DNA of 64,000 nt, taken from positions 28,210,001 through 28,274,000 of the forward strand of contig NC_088862.1 of NCBI RefSeq assembly GCF_963853765.1, in the 5' to 3' direction. This DNA comes from Magallana gigas (lineage: Eukaryota). Below are positions 6,196-57,400 of this stretch, piece by piece. Positions within the stretch are counted from its first letter, which is position 1. Each line of letters begins with the position of its first letter. The notes under the pieces were generated by a model. That model made no database searches. It had not been told where the DNA came from and worked only from the letters and a program-made list of their open reading frames with translations. Position numbers and translations under genes: made by a program.

Positions 6196-6200
6196 GAGAG
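6196..6200. repeat. Target-site duplication GAGAG (partner 17443-17447)
   Basis: Identical 5-mer immediately outside both LTR termini. Confidence 0.93.
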
Positions 6201-7863
6201 TGTAACGTAGCAGTACCGGGTGTATTTATAATTGGATTAAATAACGACCAAATAACTCAACCATTCGCAGAATAAGATATAAGACCTTTGTAAAGTTAAA
6301 CGAACAATTTTATTAACGATTTCAACAAATGACAATTTATATTAAAGAATAAATATGCAGCTTACACTCATCGTACACACATGAATAAATAATGAATAAT
6401 AATAATAAAAAATTAATAGAGTCGCTGAATACACTCAAAAAAATCCCTTAAAACAGACTACGAATTTTGAATAAAAATCCCAACCCGAAAAATATATTAT
6501 TTTAATTAATGACGCATATTAATAGGGGACAAGTCATAGTTATATATAACTTGAGACTTGTTAAACCTAACAACAAGTTGTGCTGTATGAAATTTACAGG
6601 CTTGACTTGTTTAAGAAAAATGCAAAGGGACCGTAAATTTCAGGTATAATTTTAGTACGAATATTAATCTTAAAATTTCAATGAAAAAATTACGTTTAAA
6701 AAGCGTTAAAAAAATCCAAATAATAAATGAGACCTTTCGTTGAATCTCTCAACTATCGGACTCAAAATGAGAGAAAGAGTACAAACTTGTAGCATAGCTA
6801 CGCTGCTTGTATGAACTAAAAATTAAAATAAAATTGAAGAGAAAATTTAAATAAATATAAAATACAATTAGGCCTATCTAGAGAGAAAAGAACTATAAAG
6901 TCTATAGACTAAAGTTCTTTCAATATACCGTAAAGGACTATATTTTGTCCTATAAACGGTTAATTCCTATCAAAATAATAAATAAAATATTTTAAGACTT
7001 CAAATAAAAGATAGTGTAAAATAAAATAAAATAAATAAATAAAAAAATCGGAAAAAACCCTACGTGACCTACCAGGCCAAAAAGTTGCAGGCGACTCTCG
7101 TGAAATCTCAGCGTCTCCGTTTATATATTAACCAATCACAGAAAACAACAGATAATACATGAAAATATCGAATATTAACAGATTGATCAGTAATATAATA
7201 TTATTGGTTTACATGTAAAATCCTACAATTTCATTGGTTAATTCACACGATCACGCATATTACTTATGACAATAATTATCAATTATTCTGAGGCATACAA
7301 AAACAATGGAAAACACATGTTTTGAATAACAAACACATACATATAGATATACACTCATAAAATCGATGTAATTAACATTTTTCATTAATAAAGGTTGCGA
7401 GAAATAGTACATATTCATAAATGCGCGCCGCGGAACTTTAACTAAATTTATCGACTATACCGTTTTCATCTTCAACCGGAAATGAACATGCGGGAAGGAA
7501 AACAATGTGCTCTTCACATATACAGTGATATACACTCAAAAATAGTGCAATCAATTAATAAGACAACCATGAAAAGAAAATAGGTATGTTCACAAAATGA
7601 ATTATCACAATGATGCTTGATGACAGTACATGTATGTTATGATACACGTTTATGCATTCAACTCGAATTTTCTCTGCACATTCAACAAAGTATATATTCA
7701 CTTGTATATTACTATACATGTGTACACTCTCATTTAATACAAATGCACAATACATATTTAACAATCTTCTCTATATTCTGCGAATAGTTTAGTCACAACA
7801 ATACAAACATTCAACACAAAAATATAATGCAAAGAAAAGGGGGGGGGGTACTCATATACTACA
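6201..7863 (-). repeat. 3' LTR (1663 bp)
   Basis: Direct repeat of 15781-17442; PPT abuts at 7864. Confidence 0.97.
6309..6314 (-). terminator. Candidate polyadenylation signal AATAAA in 3' LTR
   Basis: tttatt on + strand, about 110 nt before the LTR end in element orientation; the LTR is AT-rich so chance occurrence is possible. Confidence 0.4.
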
Positions 7864-7876
7864 CTGCCCCCTCTTT
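7864..7876 (-). promoter_or_regulatory. Polypurine tract (PPT)
   Basis: AAAGAGGGGGCAG directly before the TG of the 3' LTR. Confidence 0.85.
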
Positions 7877-8864
7877 AAATGTTCATGTCCCCATGAACAA
7901 TATCAATCTAAAAACACAGAAAACATAGACAAGAACATCATATGCATACCATCTTAAACAGTTTTACACCCACACAAAAATATTACACATAAACATAAGA
8001 TAAAAATATGTCATACACACAACTTTCATTCAACTAAATATAAAATCCCATTAATAAAAAAAAATGTAACATCTCACATGTACCATGACAACTTCACAAA
8101 ATAATAAACAAGACAAGGACAATAAAATGGTGATGCTTGTACTGATTTACATCAAATAAAATGCTCAAAAATTCTGTACCAACAGCAACAAAAGCCATAC
8201 CCATGGTAACAAAAATACATAACCATGCTAACAAAGGAAATTTCATGTCTCTAAAGAGGTTCTGTATTATGCCAAAGAAAAACTATATACAATAAGCAAA
8301 GAACCTTCGGTGATCAATCGTCATTGATAACACCTAAAATTGCGGAGCCAATCGTCACTGTACTACCGACTTAAGTATACCTAATTTTTAAGGACAAAAT
8401 AGTAAACCTATCATTCGCTACTGAACATCTATATAGCTGAAATATTCTTCTTAATTCAAAATGATTAGACAAATATAAACGAATCAATTAAAATCAATTA
8501 CTATAGATGTGTCATATTCATAGGTATCTTCTTCAAACATTTCTATCTACTATGAAAGTGATAGACATAATACTATAATATCACTGTACAGGAAAATCTA
8601 GCTCACAATGTCAGCTGTAATGTCATACAAGAATAATAAGATACATCTAGTTCTCATTTTAGGAACAACAGAAACTGGCAAGATAATTGGATATGGCACA
8701 AGAACATGATACAATATATATATAAGTAAACAATGATACACTGTGCTATGAAAAGTCCATCTTTCACTATCAGTGGACAATTTATGGTATATACATACAT
8801 ATTAAAATCCAACCCCCATCCCCAACTACAACCTATACTTTACCCTTAAATTTCTATATACATA

Positions 8865-9803
8865 CTAAGTACTTTTCTTAACGACTGACTTCATCTTCTT
8901 TGGAGGGGGTGATGGGGACCTTGACCGGGACCGGCTTCTTTCTCTCGTGAATAATGTCCTAGATCTTTTCCATCTGTCATCTCTTTGGATATCCCTATTC
9001 CTGGGGGGCATTAGTCGGTGGGGTCGTACGACAACTCGTGGGCGGTAGAAATGATTAGTTGGCCTTCGTGGGGATCTCCTCTGGTTTCTGCTGATAACTG
9101 GGGTTGGAGGCCTGTCGGGCAAAGGAGTTAACCCGCGCTGTGGACCACTGTTGTAGAAATACCCTGTAAGTGTCTTGTTGAGCTCTTGAATGGCCTTGGT
9201 CTGCTCTTGCAGGGCACGCACCTGTCTCTCTCCCTGTTTCCTGATTTCCTCTTTAATCTGTTCGAATACTGTTGTGGGTGTGTCTTCCTTCTCTGGCTTA
9301 TCTATTTCTACACTTTCTCCAACTCCTAGAAGATCTGGTAGGATATCCTCAAAGGGTGGTACATCACCAAGAGATTCCGGTGTCACAATGCCGGTACTCT
9401 CTGTTGACTCAATGTTTAGAGTATTGGGAAGACTGGCAGCCACTTCTAATAAATTCTGGAGGCTCTTTTCGTCATTCTTCTTCTGTTGGTTCATCCAGTG
9501 TGCTAATGATGAAGGTTGATCCCAACGTTTAAGGTGGTCATCCTTCCATACAAATGGATCAGCGGCTCTGACAATATCCACAGGCAGATCTGTGTTCTTG
9601 TGCGGTCCATACCATTTCCCATGGTTTTCAACATCTTTCAAGGTAAGAGACATATAGTCACATTTACTACATGAAAATGGGACCTGGTCTCTGGTTACAT
9701 GTGTTTTTAAATAATGTTTTATGGCATATTTCTTGATTTGTTTATAGTCACAAATGCTGCACTGGAAAACCCTTCCTTTCTTCTCTGCCTTGGAAATATC
9801 CAT
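8865..9803 (-). CDS. Retrotransposon ORF3: two C2H2-like zinc fingers, coiled coil, Pro/Arg-rich region and RS-rich tail (312 aa)
   Basis: Intact ORF co-oriented with gag-pol; C-x2-C-x11-H-x4-H and C-x2-C-x12-H-x6-H; QIKEEIRKQGERQVRALQEQTKAIQELNKTL; RERSRSRSRSPSPPPKKMK; ACCATGG start preceded by tttacag acceptor. Confidence 0.85.
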   Translation of the reverse strand: MDISKAEKKGRVFQCSICDYKQIKKYAIKHYLKTHVTRDQVPFSCSKCDYMSLTLKDVENHGKWYGPHKNTDLPVDIVRAADPFVWKDDHLKRWDQPSSLAHWMNQQKKNDEKSLQNLLEVAASLPNTLNIESTESTGIVTPESLGDVPPFEDILPDLLGVGESVEIDKPEKEDTPTTVFEQIKEEIRKQGERQVRALQEQTKAIQELNKTLTGYFYNSGPQRGLTPLPDRPPTPVISRNQRRSPRRPTNHFYRPRVVVRPHRLMPPRNRDIQRDDRWKRSRTLFTRERSRSRSRSPSPPPKKMKSVVKKST

Positions 9804-10008
9804 GGTTTTCTGTAAATTTTACAGATAGTAATTAAAGGTAAGTATAAATATACTTATATATATAAATATCATAAATCCAGCCCCAATGTTCTTATACACC
9901 CATAGTTGTAGTCTGTTTTATGTAACAATATGTCATTGTACATATATAGTATATAGTTCATAGAATGTTATACATCATGTACATAATATTTTGTCTTTAA
10001 AATTAAGT

Positions 10009-13000
10009 TTAAGTAAACTTCTGAAATTTCTTCAAAGCAGTTTTCATCCACGCCAATTTGTTTCCTTGATATGGCTTAATTTTGTCATGGTGAACTATTC
10101 TTTGTGTTCCCTTTTCATCTATTTGAACTCTGTATAATATATCATTCAACTTTTGTAGGATGAGGAATGGTCCATGGTATTTCAACAGTAGTTTCCTGCT
10201 TTCCATCTCAAGTTGGGGCTGCTCATGTAACATCAAAACAAGATCTCCTGGACTATACAGGTTTAAGGACATTTTTGTATCATATCTATCTTTCTGTACT
10301 TTTGCTGCCGTTTGTAGTTTTCTTCTGACAATTATATGGGCTTCATACAAATTATCACGTAAATTGTTGATATACTCTCCGTAAGAAGAGTTATCATCAT
10401 CTTCATTTGGACAGAATAAAATCTCCAGAGGTAGTTTTAATTCTCTACCTAACATTATAAAATTTTGGGAAAAATTTGTAGACTCCTGCGGCGTACATCT
10501 ATAGGCCATAGCTAAGCATCCCAAATTGAGGTTCCAATTGGTCTGTTTTCCTTTGATATAGGATTTAATCATGCTTACTAGTGTTCTGTTAAACCTTTCT
10601 ACCATCCCATTGGCTTTGGGATTCCTAGGGGTTGTTCTTGTCTTTTTAATTTCTAAAAGTTGACAAAGTTCTTTAAATATTTGGCTCTCAAAATTTCTGC
10701 CTTGGTCGCTATGTAAACTCAAGGGACATCCGAAACGAGCAATAAACTCATTTAAAATTTTATCTGCACAGGTAATGGCAGTTTGGTCAGGTACTGCTAA
10801 AATTTCGACCCATTTGGTGAAGTAGTCCATAACTACTAGAATGTATTTATTTCCTCGAGGTGTTCTTGGTAATGGTCCCAAAATATCTGTGGCTACTCTA
10901 TCTAATGGGGCGCCCACTCTCATATCTCCCAACGGTGCCTTGGGTGGCTTAACAGGAGGCTTATTCATTTGACAAATTTGGCATTTAGAGACCCATATTT
11001 TAATATCTTGTCTCATTTCAAACCAATAGAATTTTCTGCGTACTTTTGCAGTGGTTTTCTTATAACCAAGGTGACCAGAAATGACAGAATCATGCATTTG
11101 GTGTAAAACATCATCTTTTAAAACTCTTGGTAAAAGTATTTGTAGACTCTCAGAAGAATCATCTTTAGATAAGTTTTTCTTTTTTAATATACCATCTTCT
11201 AGTACAATAGAATCCCATATACAAAGATAATGTCTAGTAGCAGGACTTAAAGTCTGTATTTGATGAAAATCAGGTTTCTTCTGTTCTCTTTTAGCTTCAT
11301 GAAGAATTTTCAGATCCGGGTCATCTTTTTGTATCTGTTCCATATTGACGGGTATATAAATATCATTCCAAGTAGTTGCTTCTGCTTTTAGTTGATTTCT
11401 GGTGACTGCACGTATTTCTACGGTATTTTTGTTTTCTGGCCATCGTTTTCTCTCTGGAGTTTCTTCCATACGCTTAGTACATTTTTTACATGGTCCACAC
11501 TTTAATGGTTCTAGGCTATCAAAATTGGAACATTGACAATCTTTAGGATTAGGACATCGAGATAATGCATCCGCATTTCCGTGCTTATTTCCTTGGCGGT
11601 ATTCTATAGAAAAGTCATAGGACGAGAGTATTTCAATCCACCTTGCAATTCTGCCCTTGGGTTCCTTTATTTTAAATAACCAAACTAATGCCTGATGATC
11701 AGTTCGAATTTTAAATTTTCTTCCTAAAAGGTATTGTCGGAAATACTCTACAAAATATCGTACTGCCAGTAACTCTTTGTCTGTGACACAGTAATTTATT
11801 TCAGCTTTGTTTAATGCTCTGCTAGCATAAGCTATTACTTTTCCTTGACCATCCTGCACTTGGCTTAAAACAGCGCCAATACTATAGTTGCTGGCGTCAG
11901 TATCTAGTACAAATTCCCCTTCCATTATAGGAAAGCTCATAATTTCTGGTCCTGTTAGTAGCTCTTTAATTTTTTGAAATGCATCTTGACAATATGTAGT
12001 CCAATTAAAGGTGATGTCTTTCTTTGTCAAATTTACTAAAGGCCTTACAATACTGGCAAAATCTTTTATGAATTTTCTGTAGTATGAAGCCATGCCGATA
12101 ATCTGTCTCACTTCGGTCAGAGTTTTAGGAATAGGCCAATCTATGATCTTCGCAATGTTGTCAGGGTTTGGTGTAATACCATTTTTGTTAATGACATGTC
12201 CCAGGAAAGAGACTTCCTTTTGAAATAATTGGCATTTGTTAGGTTTCAGCTTTAGGCCAGCTTTTCTAATTCTTTCCAGTACTTCCTTTACTCTGTTCAA
12301 ATGTTCTTGAAAATTGGACCCAAATACAATGATATCATCAAGATAAATTAGGCAGGTCTGCCATTGTAGGCCATTCAAAATCATTTGAAGGGTACGTTGA
12401 AAAGTTTGTGCACTCCCCTTCATTCCCATGGGCATAGCAAGGAATTCCCACAATCCATATTTTGTAATAAAAGCAGTTTTTGGTATATCAGACTCTCGAA
12501 CAGGAACTTGGTGGTAACCAGATGTAAGGTCAAATGTAGAAAATATTGTCGCACCAGATACTGCATCTAAACAGTCTTGTATTCTTGGTAGAGGAAAAGC
12601 ATCATTTATTGTCACATCATTGACCCTTCTGTAGTCTACACATGGTCGGATTTTACCATTTTTCTTGAGTACCAAGTTAAGTGGGGATGCCCAAGGAGAA
12701 TTAGATTTTCTAATTATTCCTTGTTTTTCCATATCATTAATAGTCTGTAATTCTGCTTCAGCATATGCAATGGGGACTCGTCTTGGAGGAAGTTTTATAG
12801 GTTTTGCATCACCAGTATCTATGATATGCTCACTCACATGAGTTAAACCAAGATCTAGATCATTCTTTGAAAATGCATCTTGATATTCTAATAGCAAGTC
12901 AAGAAGCAATTTCTGAGAAGTCTGGTCAAAATTGTTGTCCTTTAATGAATTCTCATACATTTGCACTAAATGTTCAGGTATTTTAATGTTTTTTGTACTC

Positions 13001-13476
13001 TCTTTTTCAGCAGAACATCTGACTGATATGGGAGGTGTGTCATTCTGACAATCATCATCAAAAACAGTTTCGTAAAGAAATTCATCAGCTATTCCAAGGA
13101 CAGCGTCTTGTCTAATTCGTTTCTCGTCGCAAGTTGGGTTAAGTATTCGTATAGGTATTGATGTACTCTTGGCTGTATCCACTAAAGTACTTGCCATCAA
13201 TAACTCATATCTTGAACTGAAATTTTCATTCGGTTCTATAATAAACTCTGTAGGTTCAGAGATGACATCCTCTCTCTCAACAAAGGCCTGTATGATTTTT
13301 TCACTATAAGGCGGAATAGTATAGTCATCTGCAGCAGTAACTCTTCTACATTTATTATTGGACTCTATTTGAATGCAGGGTATATCTACCCCTTGTAATT
13401 TCAAAATTCCTTGACTAAGGATGATATCTGCAGCGACACCTTGTTTATTTTGTAAGACATCCACCCCAAGAGACAT
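10009..13476 (-). CDS. pol: Pol: protease C-terminus, reverse transcriptase, RNase H, integrase
   Basis: YLDD in RT; LDTDAS..GAVLSQ RNase H; HHCC zinc motif; D-D-E (ATDILGP, HSDQG, MVERFN); GPF C-terminal module. The ORF-track Met is not the real start. Confidence 0.96.
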   Translation of the reverse strand: MSLGVDVLQNKQGVAADIILSQGILKLQGVDIPCIQIESNNKCRRVTAADDYTIPPYSEKIIQAFVEREDVISEPTEFIIEPNENFSSRYELLMASTLVDTAKSTSIPIRILNPTCDEKRIRQDAVLGIADEFLYETVFDDDCQNDTPPISVRCSAEKESTKNIKIPEHLVQMYENSLKDNNFDQTSQKLLLDLLLEYQDAFSKNDLDLGLTHVSEHIIDTGDAKPIKLPPRRVPIAYAEAELQTINDMEKQGIIRKSNSPWASPLNLVLKKNGKIRPCVDYRRVNDVTINDAFPLPRIQDCLDAVSGATIFSTFDLTSGYHQVPVRESDIPKTAFITKYGLWEFLAMPMGMKGSAQTFQRTLQMILNGLQWQTCLIYLDDIIVFGSNFQEHLNRVKEVLERIRKAGLKLKPNKCQLFQKEVSFLGHVINKNGITPNPDNIAKIIDWPIPKTLTEVRQIIGMASYYRKFIKDFASIVRPLVNLTKKDITFNWTTYCQDAFQKIKELLTGPEIMSFPIMEGEFVLDTDASNYSIGAVLSQVQDGQGKVIAYASRALNKAEINYCVTDKELLAVRYFVEYFRQYLLGRKFKIRTDHQALVWLFKIKEPKGRIARWIEILSSYDFSIEYRQGNKHGNADALSRCPNPKDCQCSNFDSLEPLKCGPCKKCTKRMEETPERKRWPENKNTVEIRAVTRNQLKAEATTWNDIYIPVNMEQIQKDDPDLKILHEAKREQKKPDFHQIQTLSPATRHYLCIWDSIVLEDGILKKKNLSKDDSSESLQILLPRVLKDDVLHQMHDSVISGHLGYKKTTAKVRRKFYWFEMRQDIKIWVSKCQICQMNKPPVKPPKAPLGDMRVGAPLDRVATDILGPLPRTPRGNKYILVVMDYFTKWVEILAVPDQTAITCADKILNEFIARFGCPLSLHSDQGRNFESQIFKELCQLLEIKKTRTTPRNPKANGMVERFNRTLVSMIKSYIKGKQTNWNLNLGCLAMAYRCTPQESTNFSQNFIMLGRELKLPLEILFCPNEDDDNSSYGEYINNLRDNLYEAHIIVRRKLQTAAKVQKDRYDTKMSLNLYSPGDLVLMLHEQPQLEMESRKLLLKYHGPFLILQKLNDILYRVQIDEKGTQRIVHHDKIKPYQGNKLAWMKTALKKFQKFT

Positions 13477-13868
13477 TCGTCATCTATATTAGCTACAATA
13501 ATGTTCTGGCGTATAACAAGATCTCCAAAGGTCAGAGTAAATTCTGCTTCGCCAAAGGAATTCAAATTCATACCGCAAGCATTTATAACACCAGTAGTAT
13601 GTTCAAGTTCAGGTCTATTCTTCATTTGTTTGTAGATTTTGTTAGACATAATACTTCTTGAAGCTCCAGTATCGATTGTAAAAACAACAGAGACATCATC
13701 TATTTTGCCTTTGACATAAATTCCAGGGCATGTTTCAAAATTTCTTTTAACATCATAAGTATATGTATCTTTACAAATGTCATTTCTTTTCTTTTCAGGT
13801 AGGTCTTCTTTTGGAGCTTGTCCTTGGATCGTCTCTTGACCTACAGTTACGATCCCCTGAAGTTTAAA
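13464..13868 (-). CDS. Aspartic protease N-terminal part, in the -1 frame relative to gag
   Basis: Open frame from the slippery site: ...CPGIYVKGKIDDVSVVFTIDTGASRSIMS...NIDDECLLG; joins the pol frame across a 1-nt break at 13464-13467. Confidence 0.9.
13799..13868 (-). promoter_or_regulatory. -1 programmed ribosomal frameshift signal (T TTA AAC, 6-nt spacer, H-type pseudoknot)
   Basis: Heptamer 13868-13862 in the gag frame; stem 1 GGATCGT/ACGATCC (13855-13849/13832-13826); stem 2 GTAGGTC/GACCTAC (13844-13838/13805-13799). Confidence 0.85.
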
Positions 13869-15607
13869 TTTCCAGGTTGCTGAGATACCGTTCCAGGCTG
13901 AATGTTTGGCTGAGATCTGGACATGTGGGAAGGATTTCTGTAGTACTGTTGAATTTTGGTTGGGCAGTCACGCGCAAAATGTCCAACATTCTTACAGTTG
14001 TAACAAATAGTGTTCTGGCTTGGAGTTGACTTGGGCCTCTGTTGAAAACCAGTTGAGGAACATCTACTCATTTCAGCAATCATCTTCTCTAGATTTTGTA
14101 TTTGTTCTTTCATTTTTAACATGTCATCTTGGAATGTTGACAATGCTGAATCTTGTACATGATAGTCATCAGTAGTAATGGATTCTGTGTTATTCTGAGT
14201 TTTCTTTGACTGTAGTTCCTGACCGCCTGATTTTCTTTTCATTTCTGGTTTTGTCTGCTTATCTGTCACTGCTCTAACTGTTCGTTTTTCGGCTCTAGCA
14301 TTACTTCTTTTGTTGAGATCGCAGAAATTAACAACTTGAAATACAGCGTCATCGATATTGTCTGGTTCTTTAATATATTCAACTTGAAATTGGATTTTCT
14401 CATCATTCAGGCCATCGAAAAATTTTCTGAGTAGATCCTCTCTTCTGGTATTTTCATCTCGACTAGGGTATGCTTTTGCATACATCTTCTTCAGGTCTGC
14501 TGCATATACTTCAACAGGTTCGTTAGGTTTCTGTCTCCTATTACTAAACTTTGCTTCGAGTGACTTTTTGGTTTCCACTACTCTGTATCTGTTGTCCATC
14601 TCTTGAATAACCTTTTTATAGTCGGATCTAATTTCCTTTCGTAGTTGCTCGAAGACAAATTCTCCTGCTCCGCCTTGCATTCTGGGTAACAGTTCATCTA
14701 ATTTATCATTATCTGTCCAGTTCCCTCTCTCAGCTACTTCTTCAAATCTTCCTTTCCATACAATCCATTTTTCTTTGTCTTGGCCCGTAAAGGGGGGCAA
14801 TTTTTGAGTGAATTTTCTTTGACGTTTATTTTGCGTTACAATTGAAGTAGATATACTTTCTTCATCAGAAGAAGATGAGGTGCTGGTACAGCTAGAGTCA
14901 TCAGTTAGTGTGGAATCTGTCTCTGCGTGTCTTGCGTGTTTTCGATTTTTCCTTCGCTTTGCTCGTCTACTGCCCTTTTGTCTAAACTGGGTTTTTGGCT
15001 GGATGACATCAGTCTGACGTTTTGTAGGATTTTCTGATTTTAGAGACATGTTTGATTGAATTGAGCTCAATACTTTCTTCATATCTTCTAAGACTGTACT
15101 TAAGTTTTCATTTGCTAGATGTGGACCTGAATTTGGGAATAAGGGATGTGGTTTTGCTGACTGAATTCTGACATTTCCAGTTCTCCTCATGTCATCATTC
15201 TCTGAGCTATCAGTGGAATCATGGATTGGAAGTGAATATTGTTGTTGGGGATTATCTCCCCTACCCAATACGAACATCTGTCCGTTACACCTGTTAGGTG
15301 TTTCAACTTGCTCATTTATAGTAAATGATCTTGTATTTTCTGTGTTTTGAGTGTTCATTGGACATGAACTAGACATCAATTCAGATGTTAAATTTGTACA
15401 TGAAGTACGCATGGTGATTGGAACAGTTAAGTTACTATTCATGACACCTCTGGGTCCCAAAGGACTAATGTCAGATCCAGTTTTTAAACTGATTTCTGAG
15501 CCAATTTCCCCTACACTATGTCTATTGTTCTTCTGTGTATCTTTCACACCGTCTGATAAAACATCTGTTTCTACAACAACCAGACCCTTTCTCCCTTTCT
15601 TTCCCAT
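13847..15607 (-). CDS. gag: Gag (capsid-like domain plus CCHC zinc knuckle)
   Basis: ATG at 15607 (AAAATGG; the track's 15616 start is TTG); KLPPFTG..W..RFE capsid-like region; CYNCKNVGHFARDC knuckle. Confidence 0.92.
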   Translation of the reverse strand: MGKKGRKGLVVVETDVLSDGVKDTQKNNRHSVGEIGSEISLKTGSDISPLGPRGVMNSNLTVPITMRTSCTNLTSELMSSSCPMNTQNTENTRSFTINEQVETPNRCNGQMFVLGRGDNPQQQYSLPIHDSTDSSENDDMRRTGNVRIQSAKPHPLFPNSGPHLANENLSTVLEDMKKVLSSIQSNMSLKSENPTKRQTDVIQPKTQFRQKGSRRAKRRKNRKHARHAETDSTLTDDSSCTSTSSSSDEESISTSIVTQNKRQRKFTQKLPPFTGQDKEKWIVWKGRFEEVAERGNWTDNDKLDELLPRMQGGAGEFVFEQLRKEIRSDYKKVIQEMDNRYRVVETKKSLEAKFSNRRQKPNEPVEVYAADLKKMYAKAYPSRDENTRREDLLRKFFDGLNDEKIQFQVEYIKEPDNIDDAVFQVVNFCDLNKRSNARAEKRTVRAVTDKQTKPEMKRKSGGQELQSKKTQNNTESITTDDYHVQDSALSTFQDDMLKMKEQIQNLEKMIAEMSRCSSTGFQQRPKSTPSQNTICYNCKNVGHFARDCPTKIQQYYRNPSHMSRSQPNIQPGTVSQQPGNLNFRGS

Positions 15608-15758
15608 TTTATTCAAGAGTACTACTACCTATGAAAATGCACACATCAAAAATTATTGTCAATAAAAATAATCAATTGTCGATAAAAAATAACCAATCAC
15701 AAAAATAATCACCCAGCAAAAAGTTCGTATCACAGGATACCCCTAAAAAAATGAGGGT

Positions 15759-15776
15759 ATCCCGCCGTGGATGCCA
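15759..15776 (-). promoter_or_regulatory. Primer binding site TGGCATCCACGGCGGGAT
   Basis: 18 nt starting TGG, 4 nt inside the 5' LTR; its complement has tRNA 3'-end geometry (T stem, 7-nt acceptor strand, discriminator G, CCA). Isoacceptor not assigned. Confidence 0.8.
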
Positions 15777-15780
15777 AAAA

Positions 15781-17442
15781 TGTAACGTAGCAGTACCGGG
15801 TGTATTTATAATTGGATTAAATAACGACCAAATAACTCAACCATTCGCAGAATAAGATATAAGACCTTTGTAAAGTTAAACGAACAATTTTATTAACGAT
15901 TTCAACAAATGACAATTTATATTAAAGAATAAATATGCAGCTTACACTCATCGTACACACATGAATAAATAATGAATAATAATAATAAAAAATTAATAGA
16001 GTCGCTGAATACACTCAAAAAAATCCCATAAAACAGACTACGAATTTTGAATAAAAATCCCAACCCGAAAAATATATTATTTTAATTAATGACGCATATT
16101 AATAGGGGACAAGTCATAGTTATATATAACTTGAGACTTGTTAAACCTAACAACAAGTTGTGCTGTATGAAATTTACAGGCTTGACTTGTTTAAGAAAAA
16201 TGCAAAGGGACCGTAAATTTCAGGTATAATTTTAGTACGAATATTAATCTTAAAATTTCAATGAAAAAATTACGTTTAAAAAGCGTTAAAAAAATCCAAA
16301 TAATAAATGAGACCTTTCGTTGAATCTCTCAACTATCGGACTCAAAATGAGAGAAAGAGTACAAACTTGTAGCATAGCTACGCTGCTTGTATGAACTAAA
16401 AATTAAAATAAAATTGAAGAGAAAATTTAAATAAATATAAAATACAATTAGGCCTATCTAGAGAGAAAAGAACTATAAAGTCTATAGACTAAAGTTCTTT
16501 CAATATACCGTAAAGGACTATATTTTGTCCTATAAACGGTTAATTCCTATCAAAATAATAAATAAAATATTTTAAGACTTCAAATAAAAGATAGTGTAAA
16601 ATAAAATAAAATAAATAAATAAAAAAATCGGAAAAAACCCTACGTGACCTACCAGGCCAAAAAGTTGCAGGCGACTCTCGTGAAATCTCAGCGTCTCCGT
16701 TTATATATTAACCAATCACAGAAAACAACAGATAATACATGAAAATATCGAATATTAACAGATTGATCAGTAATATAATATTATTGGTTTACATGTAAAA
16801 TCCTACAATTTCATTGGTTAATTCACACGATCACGCATATTACTTATGACAATAATTATCAATTATTCTGAGACATACAAAAACAATGGAAAACACATGT
16901 TTTGAATAACAAACACATACATATAGATATACACTCATAAAATCGATGTAATTAACATTTTTCATTAATAAAGGTTGCGAGAAATAGTACATATTCATAA
17001 ATGCGCGCCGCGGAACTTTAACTAAATTTATCGACTATACCGTTTTCATCTTCAACCGGAAATGAACATGCGGGAAGGAAAACAATGTGCTCTTCACATA
17101 TACAGTGATATACACTCAAAAATAGTGCAATCAATTAATAAGACAACCATGAAAAGAAAATAGGTATGTTCACAAAATGAATTATCACAATGATGCTTGA
17201 TGACAGTACATGTATGTTATGATACACGTTTATGCATTCAACTCGAATTTTCTCTGCACATTCAACAAAGTATATATTCACTTGTATATTACTATACATG
17301 TGTACACTCTCATTTAATACAAATGCACAATACATATTTAACAATCTTCTCTATATTCTGCGAATAGTTTAGTCACAACAATACAAACATTCAACACAAA
17401 AATATAATGCAAAGAAAAGGGGGGGGGTACTCATATACTACA
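15781..17442 (-). repeat. 5' LTR (1662 bp)
   Basis: Differs from the 3' LTR, by eye, at 6448/16028 (t/a), 7293/16873 (g/a) and one G in the terminal G run; PBS follows it. Confidence 0.97.
16700..16716 (-). promoter_or_regulatory. Candidate LTR core promoter (TATATAAA with adjacent CCAAT)
   Basis: TATATAAA at 16707-16700, just upstream of a GC-richer patch in an otherwise very AT-rich LTR; further CCAAT/ATTGG boxes lie upstream. Confidence 0.5.
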
Positions 17443-19366
17443 GAGAGTAAAAATTTATTTATTTTTTTATTTACAAATGAGACTTTTGTTAAGGAATATA
17501 AGATTCAATCTACAATACAAATAATTTCATAACAAGATTGTAAAAATGAAAAACGTTAGCATTGATAAAAATAAATCTGATTTTCTTTATATCAATCAGA
17601 AAATTATTTTCAATGTATCTACATTGTGTTGGTTTATGTACATTACGTTTTATTGAAGAAGATGTTGTTAAAAAAAATATCAATATTTGTGATAAACAAT
17701 TTGTGTTTTAATATTCAACCCTAAAACAGAAAAGGATTTCACGGGTAAAGTAATCAGAGAAATTAAATTCTTTTTTTTAGGGTTTTAAGTTCGTTCATGG
17801 TTCAAATGATAATCGTTAGAGGCCTGTTTGAGACGCATTTTTATGTCTGTGACTCTTATGAAACATAAATCTTAATTTCAAAGATGCAAAATAACAGAAA
17901 AAATTGTGAAAATGATATGGAAAAAAAGAAAACAGCAAATATCGGACATGTAAATGTGCATATTGTAAGGGTCAACTCTGCAAACATTTCGATGGCGGAC
18001 ATTCAAATGGTTAAACAAGCATTCCTTTTAAAGGAATGATAGGCATGTAATATCGTTTGTCAGCTCTGTAACAATAATGTAACACGGAAGCATTTACGCT
18101 ACATGCAATAAACTATATATAGCACCGTTTTGTTGATTTCCGAAATAGCAAAGCATGAATAAGCTTCACCTTTAGTAGGCGAATTATACTTCCGATAAAT
18201 ATTCTTACGCAACGTGGTTTCAATCATTTTACAATGTATATGTAACTGTATAATTGTGCTTTTTTTTTAAGCAAACATATTAAATAACGTTTTTAGTAAT
18301 TAACGTGTTATTAAAGATATAGATGAGGTTGTCATTGCGTAGTGAAAAAATAAGTGCAAAATGCAATGCGTGCGCATTTTTATAAAATTTTCCGGATGCC
18401 TCATATGGACAGAACTGTGATCGGCCGAAGCCGAAAATGGTGTTTCAGGGGTGTTAAGTGCCTAATGAGAGCAGAGAAACTTCGCGGGGGGGGGGGGGGG
18501 ATCCGCACACATTGACTATTTGCAGGGACATGTCCAAGGCACAGTTTTAATAAATCTTTGAATCAATAATAGATAAATGTCTTACACATATGTTATAGCA
18601 TATGCATACAAATACTCATTGAGTACATAATAATTATTTATTTCGTTTTTGTTTTTTCTTGTTCTATTACATGAATATACAAGACGAAATACGAGCTTGA
18701 GCGGGGCCTCTGAAAAAAATCTTAAATACCAATTTTGTTCCATAGAGACGCAATGATTTGCTACCGCATTTTTAGTTAAATGCTGATGTATATTACGTTT
18801 TTTACAAGACCATTTTACATAAACACATTTTTATCATTTTTTTTAAAAAGGTACAAGACACATGATGTTCTATACACTGGGTATAGAAAATAATTGTATC
18901 TAACAAAAATTATTTACAAAAATATTACAATAGCTTTTGGTCCCTTTTACCCATTACTTTTTCCTATAGTCTTTAAACGATGTGTTAAAGTATTGTAATC
19001 TCAATTAAACGTAATTTTACATTTATTGTTTAATTACAGGTATTTCCAATGTAATGGAAGCAGACACAACAATGAATTTAACAAATCTCCTTCGTGAAAC
19101 AAAGGAAACAAAACATTGATTAACTCTATAATGTTTGCTATGATCGGACTAGCGGCAGTATCGTTCATCATATATATGATATACATTTACACTATAGCAT
19201 TAGAAAAAGGTATTGTATACGCAGCCCCTATTTAGCAAAAATGATATGAAAAGGCAAACCTCGTCCGCTTCAAAAGAATAAATTACATCTACAGAGTACG
19301 ATTTCCTCTTTTTCTTGCGGATTTTATAGTTAATTCATAGGTCTATACAAACAGCAAAACTGAACC

Positions 19367-25549: not shown

Positions 25550-26392
25550 TCATGAATGTATTCTGAACATTGCTTTCATTTCTTTGTTAAGTTTCTTGAT
25601 CTGTGTACAGTAAATAAATGGGTTGACAGCTGAGTTTGAGGCAGAAAAGCAGATAATCAAAAACATATCTAACCGCGAGGAGACCCCCTTGAACCCAATA
25701 ACGATAGAGGGTACGATAGAAATCATGAAGGTGATGAGTATCAAGGTCACAACCTTCATTGATTTTACCATTCTTTTTCTCACTCGATTATTTGAGTTCG
25801 AGTTTACACCAATGATCGTCATGTTGTGCAATTTATATATCTTCCATAAAGTAAGAAGGTAAAAGAAAAAAGCTATACTTAGAACTAGGGTTTGGAATGA
25901 CCCAAACACAACTGCGTATATGGTTTTTCGTAATAGATAGTTCAAATCACATCCGTGCATTAAGAAATAATAAACAAGCACGTACAAAACAATAGAGACA
26001 ACCCACGTGACACTGAACACAATGTACTTCCTTTTACCGTTCCATAAAAGATGATTTAACCTATTTTCAGTAATCACTAGGTACCGATTTAAACTGATGA
26101 ATATTGTCTGCAATATTGACATTTGATAGGTTGCACCACTGACAATATTCAATATAGTGCACGATAAATGAAGGTTTCCATCGTTTGAGTCATTGTTCGG
26201 CATCAGCACTGTTCCATACGTTATGAGGATGACCCCAAATATGAAATCACAGACTGATAACGAGATTACAAGATTGTAATGTGTGTTGTCTCGGAGACTT
26301 TTATTTCGAGTGGCTGCCAGTACAACCATAAGATTCTCGACAGTAGCCAAAACTCCTAGGGTGGTAAGAATGAGTTTTTCTTCTATCTCCAT
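25550..26392 (-). CDS. Intronless rhodopsin-like (class A) GPCR, 280 aa, orphan
   Basis: Seven hydrophobic segments; EN in TM1, LSVCD in TM2, ISLNRY in TM3, NSAVNPFIY in TM7. Confidence 0.9.
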   Translation of the reverse strand: MEIEEKLILTTLGVLATVENLMVVLAATRNKSLRDNTHYNLVISLSVCDFIFGVILITYGTVLMPNNDSNDGNLHLSCTILNIVSGATYQMSILQTIFISLNRYLVITENRLNHLLWNGKRKYIVFSVTWVVSIVLYVLVYYFLMHGCDLNYLLRKTIYAVVFGSFQTLVLSIAFFFYLLTLWKIYKLHNMTIIGVNSNSNNRVRKRMVKSMKVVTLILITFMISIVPSIVIGFKGVSSRLDMFLIICFSASNSAVNPFIYCTQIKKLNKEMKAMFRIHS

Positions 26393-54419: not shown

Positions 54420-57400
54420 CTACCAGGCATCTTTCTTCAACATTTTCCCCTTTTTAGCCGGCCCCTTCTTGGCCGGGCTTGCTTCCGGTTCCCTGGGCCC
54501 GGGGGCCTTTGGTTTCGGTGCCGCTTTAGTTGCTGGCGGTGGAGGTGGTGCCCTCGATGTGGTGGGGCCGTCTCTGTGGGCCCGTGATGATACCGGTGCC
54601 TCCTTGACCTCTATACTCTCTACGTCAGGGTGGACACTGTTGTTTTTGCACCACACGGTGTAGATGATAGCGGTGATGATAATGGTGACGATCGTGGCTG
54701 AGGCCAGGATGATGATTACAAACACGGCCTTGTCCCCGAGGGCAAGCGATGATGAGGGCTGAATAAAACAAATCGTGTTAATAGTATATATAGGTAATCT
54801 GTAAGCATTTGTTGGAGCGTCTCTGTGGGGCCGTGGATATACCAGGGTTGTTTTCAAATGAATAGTTACGTTTACTTGTTGAAAAATCAATTTCAACAAC
54901 CGCGCCCATTTAGAAATATTTACAGTGTTACCAGCTTTTTCTTACTTTTCAATGCTCAAAATGGACTAAGTGACTGACAGAATAAATCTGTCCTTACATG
55001 TAACTGTTCAAAAAAGAATGTTTCCATGTATTTTGTATGACGTAAATACCGTTACTGCTGATGCTGGTAAACTAATCGGTGATTGGCTGGTGGATGCCGG
55101 AGACTGACTGCTAGATGCTGCTGATTGGCTGCTTGTAGCGGGTGAGGAGCTAGCAGAGGGCGTGTCTGTCGTCGAAGACGCTGATTGGTCGGTTGTGTTT
55201 TCCGTAGATGGCGCTGATGATGTGATACTACAAGAGCTCTCGTCTGATTGGTCCCCGCAATTTTTATCTCCATCGCATTTAAGAGAATCGCTGATGCATC
55301 TATTAACAATGAAAAGAAGAGAATATTTACTTAAAATAACCCAGATATAAAATTTGGTTTTAAATAGTTTTAAATATAATCATACAAAAAGATACTGGAT
55401 TGTTCTTAAGCTTGGGAGTTCAAACATAAAATGAGAGCGATTTAATTTGTTCAACTGGTCATACATATGATGTACATGTAAGAAAACCCTTATTGTCTAA
55501 ATTTCCATTGTATATGTACTATTTCCCACATCCAAAACAATTTTACTTTTTGGCGATTCATCAAAATTTGCACGTATTTTTTCCTGCAAAAGTTCTGAAA
55601 CTAATGAAAGGAAATAGTTAAGAATTTTGCCGTTAATACTTTTTCCCTCATTAAAAAAAATTGACACAAAACAATATTTAGATATTTTCGATGAAATTAC
55701 TGGCATTTTACTGCCATATATTTTTGAGATATTTAACAGTGCCTTCCGATCTACTTGGCAAAAAAAGGGTGGGGGGTGTTGCAAGCCATGTCCAATATGT
55801 ATATGTATATGTATGAAAGAGCTACGTGGACTCCAGACCGTGACTAGACACGATAAGGGTGGGGGGTCTGGTGGACGGTCCGATTTGATTGAAAACCATT
55901 GTATTATTTTTATAATGAAGTTTCCTATATTACCAGATTTTTAAGAACGGAGACAGAATACATTTAAGATACACATGTATACCTATCTGTGTCACAGATA
56001 AACTTTGATCCTGAGCAGCTACCGTTGGAAGCATCAGAGAATGACGTCACTAGCGCCGCAAAGCCTGTACCATTATGGGAGCTGGCTGCATCCGTGACGA
56101 GGGAAAACGTTACTATGGGAACGCTAAACTCAAATACTTGATTTGTAGCTGAAAGCATAATGATTTTAAAATATCATGAAAATAAAGCAAAGTATGAATT
56201 ATACAAAGAAAGAAAGAAAGAACGAAAGAAAGAAAATAAGAAAGAAAGAAAAGGAAATGAGGAGAACGGATTAAGAGGGAGAGAGAGATAGAAAGAGAGA
56301 GAGAGGCTAGTGAGGGGCACAGAAAAAGAGTGAGAGCAGAAAGAGACGGAGAAAAAATAAAAAAAGGGGTAAGGTGAGAGAGGCAGAGAGAAAGAGAGAG
56401 ATACATGTACGTTATCTAAATTGAGAGAGGGGGGAGAAATGTTCACACCATTGGTGCCACAGAGAGTCTGCTTTGTGTTGGCCTCGTCTGCTGGGTCGTA
56501 GATTTCTAACCGATCGACGCAAGATCCGTTCTGAGCGTCAGCCAGGTCAAAGGTCACGAGTACCAGGGTCTTAGTTCCTGTAAATCATTAATGAACCCCA
56601 TTAGAAACAAATCAATAATGTTCGCGGAGACTAAATTTATGCGAATTTCGTAGCTATCTCACTAATAATCACCCAAACGAATTTTGAAATAAAAATTTTT
56701 ACTTCTTAGTCATAATAGATATCATACGAAGTTATTATTACATCCTCGTTGAATTGATAATTCACGAAATTGTCCCTTACGTATCTTAAATGATTTTATA
56801 TTAATCTGACCGTTACAAACTACAATGTAGTACGTTCAGTTCAGTAATTAAAAAGTTAACATCACTGACAATCTACCCGAATTTAAAAGTCAAATTATAC
56901 GGATATTAGCTACATGTATGTTCCAGATGTTCTGTGGTAGACCCGAGTCCTCGATCGACGTTAAAACAAGTGTGATCGATTTTACAGGGGGATATATTAG
57001 TAAACCGTATTTTTTTCGTAAATGGTCTGCATATTGATGTTTAAATACCGCATAATTTAGCTTTTTATAAGAATTTTTATAAACTATGGCTCTACAATAT
57101 TTTTAATCAGTTTATTGTGCTAAAAAAAATGCTTTCATTGGCATTGTATTTCATGGGGGTGGGGGTGGCTTATGCATGTATTTCTCTATTAATTGTCTTT
57201 TTTTAGTAAGATCAATGCAAGATTTCCANNNNNNNNNNNNNNNNNNNNNNNNNNNNNNNNNNNNNNNNNNNNNNNNNNNNNNNNNNNNNNNNNNNNNNNN
57301 NNNNNNNNNNNNNNNNNNNNNNNNNNNNNNNNNNNNNNNNNNNNNNNNNNNNNNNNNNNNNNNNNNNNNNNNNNNNNNNNNNNNNNNNNNNNNNNNNNNN

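What the first reader, a model, noticed from the sequence alone, without database searches (positions are those of the whole stretch)
8865..9811. Gypsy retrotransposon carries a non-env accessory gene (zinc fingers, coiled coil, RS tail) with its own splice acceptor: possible Rev/Tat-like regulator
Seen: an intact 312-aa ORF in the env position with no signal peptide or TM helix. It has two atypical C2H2 fingers, a heptad-like helix, an Arg/Pro-rich stretch and an RSRSRSRSPSPPPKK tail. A TTTACAG acceptor (9811-9810), of the same style as host acceptors in this window, lies 6 nt before an ACCATGG start. Established: env in errantiviruses and Rev/Tat in complex retroviruses are expressed from spliced subgenomic RNAs, and RS domains typify SR splicing/export factors. 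Inference: the element encodes a nuclear nucleic-acid-binding regulator of its own transcription, splicing or export. I do not know a characterised Ty3/Gypsy accessory protein with this architecture, but similar ORFs may exist unannotated in mollusc repeat libraries.
Basis: partly seen in the sequence, partly recalled or inferred. Interest (0 to 1): 0.88.

Follow-up and report, generated by a model that had tools for sequence, protein, structure and literature searches.

The report
Oyster retrotransposon's conserved zinc-finger accessory gene
A young Ty3/Gypsy retrotransposon in an oyster genome carries, where a viral envelope gene would sit, a third gene for a probably nuclear zinc-finger protein; the same gene sits in the same place in distantly related bivalve elements and is under strong purifying selection, so it is a real, so far undescribed accessory gene whose function is still inferred, not shown.

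Summary
Window 6201-17442 (minus strand) is an 11.2-kb Ty3/Gypsy element with 1.66-kb LTRs that are 99.8% identical, a 5-bp target duplication, gag, pol and an intact 312-aa ORF3 (8865-9803). ORF3 has no signal peptide and no membrane helix. It has two C2H2 fingers in a compact 125-aa domain (AlphaFold pLDDT 93), an acidic LxxLL linker, a long helix and an Arg/Pro/RS tail.

It is not a one-off capture. Homologues down to about 27% identity lie directly after integrase in at least nine element lineages, including Magallana gigas and Pinctada imbricata, and they keep the same architecture. ORF3 dN/dS is 0.05-0.10, as for pol.

An acceptor-like site lies 6-27 nt before the ORF3 ATG in seven lineages (combined P about 3e-4). 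I found no donor and no spliced transcript.

Pfam, PDB and BFVD give only generic C2H2 matches, with no hit to any retroviral regulator.

Best reading: a nuclear nucleic-acid-binding regulator made from a subgenomic mRNA. RNA export or splicing control (as with Cer1 CERV or Rev) is slightly favoured over transcriptional activation. The function is untested.

This is a new variant of a known kind: non-env ORF3s of LTR retrotransposons.

The parts
17443..17447 (.). Target-site duplication GAGAG (upstream side in element orientation)
   Evidence: the same 5 bases flank both ends of the element
15781..17442 (-). 5' LTR (1662 bp, TG..CA termini)
   Evidence: differs from the other LTR by 2 mismatches and 1 single-base indel
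15759..15776 (-). Candidate primer-binding site starting TGG, 4-5 nt after the 5' LTR
   Evidence: read directly from the sequence; the matching tRNA was not identified (the window has no tRNA gene)
13847..15607 (-). gag, intact, with one CCHC zinc knuckle
   Evidence: no frame change and no in-frame stop against the relative's gag
10009..13844 (-). pol (protease, RT, RNase H, integrase with H2C2 and SH3-like C-terminus); broken once in this copy (one frameshift, no in-frame stops)
   Evidence: aligns over all 1278 residues of the uninterrupted pol of relative L001, but in two frames; another M. gigas copy (L021) lacks this frameshift
9804..10008 (-). AT-rich pol-ORF3 spacer with a branch-point-like ATACTTAC, the TTTACAG acceptor-like site (AG at 9811-9810) and a TATA-like run
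   Evidence: acceptor-like sites at the same relative position in seven lineages; ATACTTA is also seen in L031 and L034
8865..9803 (-). ORF3, 312 aa, intact: the accessory gene of the finding
9429..9803 (-). ORF3 residues 1-125: compact domain of two C2H2 fingers, a beta-hairpin and a long helix carrying the conserved S..W motif
   Evidence: pLDDT 93, pTM 0.80; 8 zinc ligands conserved in at least 90% of members; pN/pS 0.04
9276..9428 (-). ORF3 residues 126-176: disordered acidic linker with the conserved LxxLL-like (also NES-like) motif
   Evidence: 13 D/E against 2 K/R; motif present in 11 of 13 full-length members
9150..9275 (-). ORF3 residues 177-218: long amphipathic helix, a candidate oligomerisation coil
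   Evidence: pN/pS 0.065
8868..9149 (-). ORF3 residues 219-312: disordered Arg/Pro-rich basic tail with S/T-P sites, a conserved RW..TLF helix, the RS run and a C-terminal KSVV motif
   Evidence: basic tail in 11 of 13 members, RS/SR dipeptides in 10 of 13, a KSVV-like end in at least 8
7877..8864 (-). About 1 kb of non-coding internal region between ORF3 and the polypurine tract
   Evidence: 87-93% identical to the L001 lineage; its small ORFs are not conserved; no unusual RNA folding
7864..7876 (-). Polypurine tract next to the 3' LTR
   Evidence: read directly from the sequence
6201..7863 (-). 3' LTR (1663 bp)
6196..6200 (.). Target-site duplication GAGAG (downstream side in element orientation)

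Best explanation
ORF3 is a long-standing accessory gene of a bivalve lineage of Ty3/Gypsy retrotransposons.

Shown: it is inherited together with gag-pol, always lies between integrase and the 3' LTR, and is kept intact by purifying selection. Its product is a soluble protein. It has a compact two-C2H2-finger domain, an acidic linker with an LxxLL/NES-like motif, a long helix and a basic Arg/Pro/RS tail.

Inferred: it is translated from a subgenomic mRNA, most likely one spliced onto the acceptor-like site just upstream of its ATG, as for errantiviral env and retroviral accessory genes. The protein probably enters the nucleus through its basic RS-type tail, oligomerises through the helix and binds nucleic acid through the finger domain and the Arg-rich tail. 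Its most likely role is on the element's own RNA: setting the balance between spliced and unspliced transcripts, or exporting unspliced genomic RNA. That would be the role of CERV in Cer1 and of Rev/Rex in complex retroviruses, reached here with an unrelated protein.

My probabilities: conserved functional accessory gene about 0.95; nuclear nucleic-acid-binding regulator about 0.6; expressed by splicing about 0.55; specifically an RNA export or splicing regulator about 0.35.
For: Linkage to the element. The homologue sits directly after integrase on the same strand in:
- the window;
- the 86%-identity oyster lineage (L001-L010, L036-L045);
- a 56-kb ENA contig (P0154);
- L031, L032 and L033;
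- L035;
- the complete Pinctada imbricata element L047, flanked by 1.68-kb LTRs.
L046 is too short to show pol, but its flanks are collinear with the window element.
ORF3 and pol identities fall together: 94/87, 54/29 and 50/33%.

Selection. Against L001, NG86 dN/dS is 0.048 and pN/pS 0.10, compared with pol 0.09-0.11 and gag 0.16-0.20. The finger domain has pN/pS 0.04. Among M. gigas copies, diversity at codon positions 1+2 is 0.0022 against 0.0095 at position 3. Most cluster members are full length.

Architecture. All eight zinc ligands are conserved. The profile matches CTCF and Ikaros fingers at E down to 6e-8. The domain model has pLDDT 93 and pTM 0.80. The acidic motif, the helix and the basic RS tail recur in members only 24-30% identical. 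Finger 2 has the H-x6-H spacing, and one member passes the Pfam cut-off for the dsRNA-binding zf-C2H2_jaz family.

Not env. There is no membrane helix and no signal peptide.

Splicing. An acceptor-like site lies 6-27 nt upstream of the ATG in seven lineages, Fisher P about 3e-4.

Precedent. In Cer1, a Ty3/Gypsy element, CERV is made from a spliced mRNA and is required for export of genomic RNA (PMC10309623). ORF3s of LTR elements are typically expressed from spliced messages (PMC5408684).
Against: - There is no transcript evidence. All 45 public contigs fetched for close relatives of this element family are collinear with genomic DNA, and they probably come from DNA sequencing.
- No convincing splice donor was found in the leader or LTR of the window element, L035 or L047.
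- The window's own acceptor has a poor pyrimidine tract (P=0.2).
- A TATA-like run in the spacer leaves room for an internal promoter.
- The 1-kb region after ORF3 shows no unusual RNA folding (z about 0), and Rfam finds nothing. So no RRE-like element is in sight, though this is a weak test.
- The fingers resemble DNA-binding fingers most closely, which favours a transcription factor.
- The RS run is short and there is no RRM.
- No similarity to Rev, Rex, Tat, Tas or any other viral regulator was returned.
- Nuclear localisation and nucleic-acid binding are inferences from composition alone.
Confidence: 0.4

Rival explanations
1. Transcriptional transactivator, working like foamy-virus Tas or deltaretroviral Tax. 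The two C2H2 fingers bind DNA in the element's long LTR, the acidic LxxLL segment recruits co-activators, the helix dimerises the protein and the basic tail is the nuclear import signal.
For: - The best sequence and fold matches are DNA-binding fingers: CTCF, Ikaros, Kaiso, Tramtrack and ZNF217.
- An acidic linker with a conserved LxxLL-type motif is typical of activation domains.
- The LTRs are unusually long, 1.66-1.68 kb, in both the window and the Pinctada element.
Against: - There are only two fingers, the inter-finger linker is not the canonical TGEKP type, and the fingers are predicted to pack into one rigid domain (pTM 0.80) instead of wrapping DNA.
- Fold matches are weak: E at least 0.05 and TM at most 0.32.
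- The LTR has no repeated candidate binding sites beyond low-complexity A/T repeats.
- The conserved RS-type tail is not explained.
Confidence: 0.2
2. Particle-associated or cDNA-associated factor: a nucleic-acid chaperone, a nuclear-import adaptor or an integration-targeting adaptor. It would travel with the element's RNA or cDNA, using an Arg-rich SPRR/RS tail like the C-terminal domain of hepadnaviral core protein.
For: - The tail is rich in R, P and S-P/R-S units in many members.
- The protein has an oligomerising helix.
- Zinc fingers could tether the protein to chromatin or to cDNA.
- This pol lacks a chromodomain, so a targeting function supplied in trans is conceivable.
Against: - gag already carries a CCHC knuckle for chaperone activity.
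- No similarity to capsid or nucleocapsid folds was returned.
- Nothing links ORF3 to particles.
Confidence: 0.12
3. Counter-defence protein: ORF3 antagonises host silencing (small-RNA or chromatin based) without acting on the element's own expression machinery.
For: Between lineages, ORF3 has a much deeper synonymous divergence than the rest of the element. Long-maintained ORF3 alleles riding on an exchanged backbone would give this pattern, which can accompany host-parasite conflict. The acidic linker is the fastest-evolving part (pN/pS 0.21).
Against: The protein as a whole is under strong purifying selection with no sign of positive selection in these pairwise tests. The finger domain is the most conserved part. 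The mosaic pattern has simpler recombination explanations.
Confidence: 0.08
4. Passenger sequence: a host zinc-finger gene fragment captured once and carried along with no role for the element.
For: The finger pair resembles host C2H2 arrays (many multi-finger hits), so a host origin of the fingers is plausible.
Against: The same architecture is retained in lineages whose pol is only 50-54% identical, in two bivalve orders. dN/dS is 0.05-0.10. The non-finger motifs are conserved. No homologue was found outside an element context.
Confidence: 0.03
5. A degenerate or unconventional envelope or cell-to-cell transfer protein.
For: Its position after pol.
Against: There is no signal peptide, no membrane helix (maximum hydropathy 0.53), no fusion-protein fold match, and the protein is highly charged and largely disordered.
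Confidence: 0.01

Closest known systems
CERV of Cer1 (Caenorhabditis elegans Ty3/Gypsy element; PMC10309623)
   Same: Both are accessory proteins of a Ty3/Gypsy element that are not env. CERV is made from a spliced mRNA, is nuclear, has a putative zinc-binding loop, an oligomerising coiled coil and a proline-directed phosphosite, and is needed for export of unspliced genomic RNA. ORF3 has analogous elements: fingers, helix, S/T-P sites and a candidate NES.
   Different: CERV is 517 aa, is encoded by five exons that overlap gag and share its N-terminus, and has H, M (C4 loop) and GTPase-like G domains. ORF3 is a single ORF after pol with two C2H2 fingers and an RS tail. No homology was detected. 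CERV's function is shown by genetics; ORF3's is only inferred.
Rev, Rex, Rem and Rec of complex retroviruses
   Same: Small, nuclear, Arg-rich, oligomerising proteins with a leucine-rich export signal, translated from spliced subgenomic RNA and acting on unspliced viral RNA.
   Different: Those proteins have no zinc fingers. Here no cognate structured RNA element was found, and no sequence or fold similarity was returned by the PDB, BFVD or protein searches.
Tas/Bel1 of foamy viruses, Tax of deltaretroviruses, Tat of lentiviruses
   Same: Virus-encoded activators of the element's own LTR, translated from spliced RNA. A DNA-binding domain plus an acidic activation domain (as in Tas) resembles fingers plus an acidic LxxLL linker.
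   Different: No similarity was returned. ORF3 uses C2H2 fingers and carries an RS tail. No response elements were identified.
env (ORF3) of errantiviruses and other env-carrying Ty3/Gypsy elements (PMC13524379)
   Same: The same genomic position between integrase and the 3' LTR, and expression from an mRNA spliced onto an acceptor just upstream of the ORF.
   Different: env is a membrane glycoprotein with a signal peptide, fusion machinery and a membrane anchor. ORF3 has none of these.
Non-env ORF3s of bdelloid rotifer LTR retrotransposons (GDSL, DEDDy, coiled-coil and TM types; PMC5408684) and additional ORFs of plant LTR retrotransposons (PMC7264820)
   Same: They show that LTR retrotransposons repeatedly acquire lineage-specific third ORFs that are not env. 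One rotifer type is a coiled-coil protein of unknown role.
   Different: None of those described is a C2H2-finger plus RS-tail protein. The rotifer ORF3s are mostly enzymes. The plant ORFs are often antisense or unrelated in sequence.
Cellular SR proteins, and the Arg-rich C-terminal domain of hepadnaviral core protein
   Same: Runs of RS / SP-R units in a basic disordered tail. In those proteins such tails drive nuclear import, speckle association or RNA binding and are regulated by phosphorylation.
   Different: ORF3 has no RRM and its RS run is only about 10 residues. It is not a capsid protein.

Membership tests
Ty3/Gypsy (Metaviridae) LTR retrotransposon (the element) | Direct LTRs with TG..CA termini and a 4-6 bp target duplication | tested here: met
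   LTRs of 1663 and 1662 bp, 99.8% identical, TG..CA termini, duplication GAGAG
Ty3/Gypsy (Metaviridae) LTR retrotransposon (the element) | pol domain order protease, RT, RNase H, integrase, with Gypsy-type Pfam families | tested here: met
   RVT_1, RT_RNaseH, Integrase_H2C2, rve, Integrase_p58_C, SH3_Tf2-1; the protease is seen in relatives and by alignment. The clade within Gypsy was not determined.
Troyka superfamily | CG..CG termini and 3-bp target duplications (PMC12440569) | tested here: not met
Classical C2H2 zinc finger (the ORF3 N-terminus) | C-x2-C ... H-x3-6-H ligands on a beta-beta-alpha fold, with a profile match to known fingers | tested here: met
   CTCF, E=6e-8; ligands conserved in at least 90% of members; two beta-beta-alpha units. 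No single Pfam finger model reaches its curated cut-off for the window protein.
Retroviral or errantiviral envelope protein | Signal peptide, membrane anchor and a fusion-protein fold | tested here: not met
   hydropathy; no fusion-protein match
SR protein family | At least one RRM plus an extended RS domain | tested here: not met
   no RRM; the RS/SR dipeptides are confined to a run of about 10 residues.
Rev/Rex-type export factors | Homology or fold similarity to a known member | tested here: not met
   no such hit
Rev/Rex-type export factors | Arg-rich RNA-binding motif, oligomerisation surface and leucine-rich export signal | tested here: inconclusive
   Arg-rich tail, long helix, and an NES-pattern match at residues 151 and 121. 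These are pattern matches only.
Rev/Rex-type export factors | A cognate structured RNA element in the unspliced transcript | tested here: inconclusive
   no Rfam match and folding z about 0 for the 1 kb after ORF3. The rest of the element was not tested, and thermodynamic z-scores are a weak test.
Rev/Rex-type export factors | Translation from a spliced subgenomic mRNA | tested here: inconclusive
   acceptor-like site conserved in position (P about 3e-4); no junction-bearing contig and no donor.
CERV family of Cer1-like elements | Multi-exon gene overlapping gag, with H, M and G domains (PMC10309623) | tested here: not met
   ORF3 is one ORF after pol, and its predicted domains differ from those described for CERV. 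A direct sequence comparison was not possible because no tool fetches the CERV protein.

The most novel reading that the evidence does not exclude
A lineage of lophotrochozoan Ty3/Gypsy elements independently evolved 'complex retrovirus' gene regulation. On this reading ORF3 is a zinc-finger/RS export or splicing regulator of the element's own RNA. Its alleles are maintained far longer than the gag-pol-LTR backbone they ride on, so ORF3 behaves as a modular cassette that is kept while the backbone is exchanged.
Probability: 0.25. Interest if true: 0.8.

Novelty: new variant of a known kind. Interest (0 to 1): 0.6.

Why it matters
Accessory regulators are what separate 'complex' from 'simple' retroviruses. 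Outside vertebrate retroviruses only one has been characterised in a Ty3/Gypsy element, CERV of Cer1.

A second, unrelated and widely conserved accessory protein in bivalve elements would show that this kind of regulation arose repeatedly. It would also give a tractable family, with many natural variants and a confidently folded 125-aa domain, for asking how retroelements manage spliced versus unspliced RNA or their own transcription.

It matters for annotation too. These proteins are currently called 'uncharacterized' or 'hypothetical' host proteins in the Magallana and Pinctada gene sets.

Finally, recently active LTR elements are relevant to bivalve genome instability.

Tried and rejected
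Searches that gave nothing beyond generic C2H2 matches
- Pfam on ORF3 and on 22 family members: only sub-threshold generic C2H2 models.
- Fold searches of the full model and of the N-terminal domain against PDB and BFVD: nothing better than E=0.02, and only single C2H2 fingers.
- Scans of JGI metagenome contigs and IMG/VR viral contigs with family peptide patterns: no confirmed relative. A first attempt failed because the alignment was too diverse.
- Rfam on the whole window: no match.
- tRNA scan to identify the primer: no tRNA gene in the window.

Tests of the splicing and RNA-element ideas
- Spliced transcripts among public contigs encoding ORF3: all are collinear with genomic DNA, and many contigs break at the same graph node upstream of ORF3.
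- Splice donor search in the leader and LTR of three lineages, by consensus count and by a rough PWM: no conserved or strong site.
- Folding of the 1 kb after ORF3: no different from shuffled sequence.
- Tandem repeats in the LTR as candidate response elements: only A/T-rich low-complexity repeats.

Ideas considered and dropped
- Troyka superfamily: rejected on termini and target duplication.
- A mutation hot spot as the cause of ORF3's excess synonymous divergence: rejected, because within M. gigas copies third-position diversity equals that of the flanks.
- Small ORFs after ORF3: not conserved in relatives.

Literature and sample identity
- Six literature searches (a seventh call failed on term syntax) found no description of this protein family.
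- The run and assembly accessions of the unnamed samples were not found in the paper library, so the host species of several lineages remain unknown.
Full report
1. What is there

The finding lies inside a complete LTR retrotransposon on the minus strand, window 6201-17442 (11,242 bp).
- The LTRs are 6201-7863 and 15781-17442. They differ by two mismatches and one single-base indel, begin TG and end CA, and are flanked by a 5-bp duplication, GAGAG.
- A TGG-initiated primer-binding candidate follows the 5' LTR, and a polypurine tract precedes the 3' LTR.
- In element orientation the genes are gag (CCHC knuckle), pol (RT, RNase H, H2C2 and core integrase, SH3-like C-terminus) and ORF3 (8865-9803, 312 aa). 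About 1 kb of non-coding sequence follows ORF3.
- Pol aligns over the whole length of an uninterrupted 1278-aa pol from a related lineage, but in two frames. This copy's pol therefore carries one frameshift and no in-frame stops. Gag and ORF3 are intact. Another M. gigas copy lacks that frameshift, so it is private to this insertion.
- The host is Magallana (Crassostrea) gigas or a very close relative: a UniRef M. gigas entry sits in the 98%-identity cluster.

2. The observation

- The ORF, the AG at 9811-9810 six bases before ACCATGG, the two C2H2 fingers, the helix, the Arg/Pro stretch and the RS run are all present.
- The protein has no membrane helix (highest 19-residue hydropathy 0.53) and a hydrophilic N-terminus, so it is not an envelope protein.
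- AlphaFold with a family alignment gives residues 1-125 as one confident domain (pLDDT 93, pTM 0.80). It consists of two beta-beta-alpha fingers, a beta-hairpin and a 29-residue helix.
- After that domain come a disordered acidic linker, a confident helix at 177-218 and a mostly disordered basic tail.

3. ORF3 is a gene family tied to the element, not a one-off capture

The word-indexed search found only close relatives, at 84-98% identity. The exhaustive representative search found 474 hits. Many are host multi-finger proteins matching only residues 9-65. A distinct set of 250-490-aa proteins match along the whole length.

When aligned, these proteins share:
- the two fingers, with all eight ligands conserved in at least 90% of 22 sequences;
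- a conserved S..W motif on the long helix;
- an acidic segment with an LxxLL-like motif (11 of 13 full-length members);
- a helix;
- a basic tail (11 of 13) with RS/SR dipeptides (10 of 13);
- often a terminal KSVV-like motif.

Wherever flanking DNA or gene calls were available, the homologue lies directly downstream of integrase on the same strand:
- the 86%-identity oyster lineage;
- a 56-kb ENA contig with gag, pol and ORF3;
- L031, L032 and L033, each with an integrase C-terminus upstream;
- L035, with gag, pol and ORF3;
- a complete element in the Pinctada imbricata chromosome assembly, with 1.68-kb LTRs (98.2% identical), inserted antisense in an intron of the host GPKOW gene.

L046, a third oyster lineage, has too little upstream sequence to show pol, but its flanks are collinear with the window element. 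One locus (L034) has too little upstream sequence to tell. ORF3 identity falls together with pol identity (94/87, 54/29, 50/33%), as expected for long co-inheritance. No homologue was found outside an element context.

4. Selection
- Against the 86% lineage, ORF3 has 128 differences at third codon positions, against 45 at first and second positions. NG86 dN/dS is 0.048 and pN/pS is 0.10. That is like pol (0.09-0.11) and tighter than gag (0.16-0.20).
- The finger domain is the most constrained part (pN/pS 0.04) and the acidic linker the least (0.21).
- Among 20 distinct M. gigas copies, diversity is 0.0022 at positions 1+2 against 0.0095 at position 3.
- Most cluster members are full length.

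5. Expression route

In seven diverged lineages the best acceptor-like site in the 40 nt before the ORF3 ATG lies 6-27 nt upstream. Each site ranks in the top 3-20% of all 40-nt windows of its own locus, and Fisher's combined P is about 3e-4. This uses a rough scoring scheme of my own.

Several of these sites are textbook acceptors with long pyrimidine tracts. The window's own site is pyrimidine-poor and is not significant alone (P=0.2). A branch-point-like ATACTTA lies 20-35 nt upstream of the AG in the window, L031 and L034.

Against this:
- I found no convincing donor in the leaders or LTRs of three lineages.
- All 45 public contigs fetched for close relatives of this element family are collinear with genomic DNA. 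They probably derive from genome resequencing and so say little about RNA.
- An internal promoter in the AT-rich spacer cannot be excluded.

I put splicing at about 0.55.

6. What the protein most likely does
- Pfam has no family for it.
- The family profile matches DNA-binding C2H2 fingers of CTCF and Ikaros.
- Fold searches return only single fingers, with E at least 0.02 and TM at most 0.32. No retroviral regulator, capsid or fusion protein came back.

The architecture is that of a nuclear nucleic-acid-binding regulator: a finger domain, an acidic LxxLL/NES-like motif, an oligomerising helix and an Arg/Pro/RS tail with S/T-P sites.

Two readings compete.
- An RNA-level regulator (export of unspliced RNA, or control of splicing). 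In its favour: the RS/Arg-rich tail is conserved across the family; finger 2 has the H-x6-H spacing; one member passes the dsRNA-finger Pfam model; the two fingers are predicted to form a rigid domain instead of beads on a string; any element with a spliced mRNA must also get its unspliced RNA out of the nucleus; and CERV of Cer1 is a precedent (PMC10309623).
- A Tas-like transcriptional activator. In its favour: the similarity to DNA-binding fingers, the acidic LxxLL segment and the unusually long LTRs.

I favour the first slightly (0.35 against 0.20). Neither is tested. The region after ORF3 shows no unusual RNA folding and Rfam finds nothing, but those are weak tests.

7. An unexpected pattern
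- Between three oyster lineages, third codon positions of ORF3 differ at 30-40%. The adjacent non-coding spacer and downstream region differ at only 6-14%, and pol third positions at about 15%.
- The change is sharp at the ORF borders.
- Within M. gigas copies there is no such excess, so it is not a local mutation hot spot.
- ORF3 alleles therefore coalesce much deeper than the backbone around them. That implies mosaic evolution: either exchange or homogenisation of gag-pol-LTR around a retained ORF3, or swapping of ORF3 cassettes. I could not resolve which.

8. Comparison with what is known
- Non-env third ORFs are known in LTR retrotransposons: enzymatic and coiled-coil ORF3s in rotifers (PMC5408684) and additional ORFs in plants (PMC7264820). 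One Gypsy accessory regulator, CERV, has been characterised.
- Six literature searches (a seventh call failed on term syntax) found no description of this zinc-finger/RS family. Studies of mollusc LTR elements and of env-carrying Gypsy elements do not mention it. Public gene sets label its members 'uncharacterized' or 'hypothetical'.
- I rate it a new variant of a known kind. Repeat libraries that I cannot search may hold the element's sequence without annotation of ORF3.

9. Limits and a slip
- The host species of several lineages are unknown, because their sample accessions were not found in the paper library.
- The clade within Ty3/Gypsy was not determined.
- Splice-site scoring used rough matrices from general knowledge.
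My working reasoning also placed the window's pol frameshift relative to pol's domains.

Noticed in passing
window 8865-9803 compared with L001:4874-5818 and L046:3-825: Synonymous (third-position) divergence of ORF3 between three oyster lineages is 30-40%. That is three to four times the divergence of the adjacent non-coding DNA (6-14%) and of pol third positions (about 15%), and the change is sharp at the ORF borders. Within M. gigas copies there is no such excess. ORF3 alleles are therefore older than the backbone, which points to a mosaic or recombinant history.
   Followed up: partly
window 10009-13844 (minus strand): This very young insertion (LTRs 99.8% identical) has one frameshift in pol, while gag and ORF3 are intact. 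Another M. gigas copy (L021) lacks it, so this copy is probably not autonomous.
   Followed up: yes
L021 (ENA metagenome-assembly contig, 99% identical copy): This copy has one internal deletion of about 0.4 kb that removes the end of pol and part of the spacer. ORF3 stays intact.
   Followed up: no
L011-L030 and L036-L043: Many independent Logan contigs from different sequencing runs begin at exactly the same point: 171 nt upstream of the ORF3 ATG in one series, and at the same point within gag in the other. This suggests assembly-graph branch points where element subfamilies diverge, in line with the mosaic pattern.
   Followed up: no
protein P0006 (UniRef A0A8W8J3W1_MAGGI, 447 aa): A public M. 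gigas gene model fuses the protease-proximal part of pol to ORF3 from about residue 58 onward. It is either a deleted copy or an annotation artefact, and it does not use the proposed acceptor.
   Followed up: no
L047 (Pinctada imbricata, GCA_033119305.1, VSWD01000005.1): A complete related element (1.68-kb LTRs, gag, pol with one in-frame stop, ORF3 annotated as a hypothetical host protein) lies antisense inside an intron of the host GPKOW gene. An unrelated pair of 0.88-kb direct repeats lies about 3.6 kb further on.
   Followed up: partly
window 25550-26392 (minus strand): An uninterrupted 280-aa ORF matches the rhodopsin-family 7TM receptor model (7tm_1, E=1e-19). It is probably a single-exon host GPCR gene or a large exon of one.
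   Followed up: no
window 15655-15722 and 8187-8235: Short imperfect tandem duplications (units of 21-22 nt, about two copies) lie in the 5' leader and in the region after ORF3. Both units contain TGGTTAT on the element strand. This may be chance.
   Followed up: no
window 46939-47100 and 57229-57428: Two runs of N (162 and 200 bases). They were left as they are.
   Followed up: no
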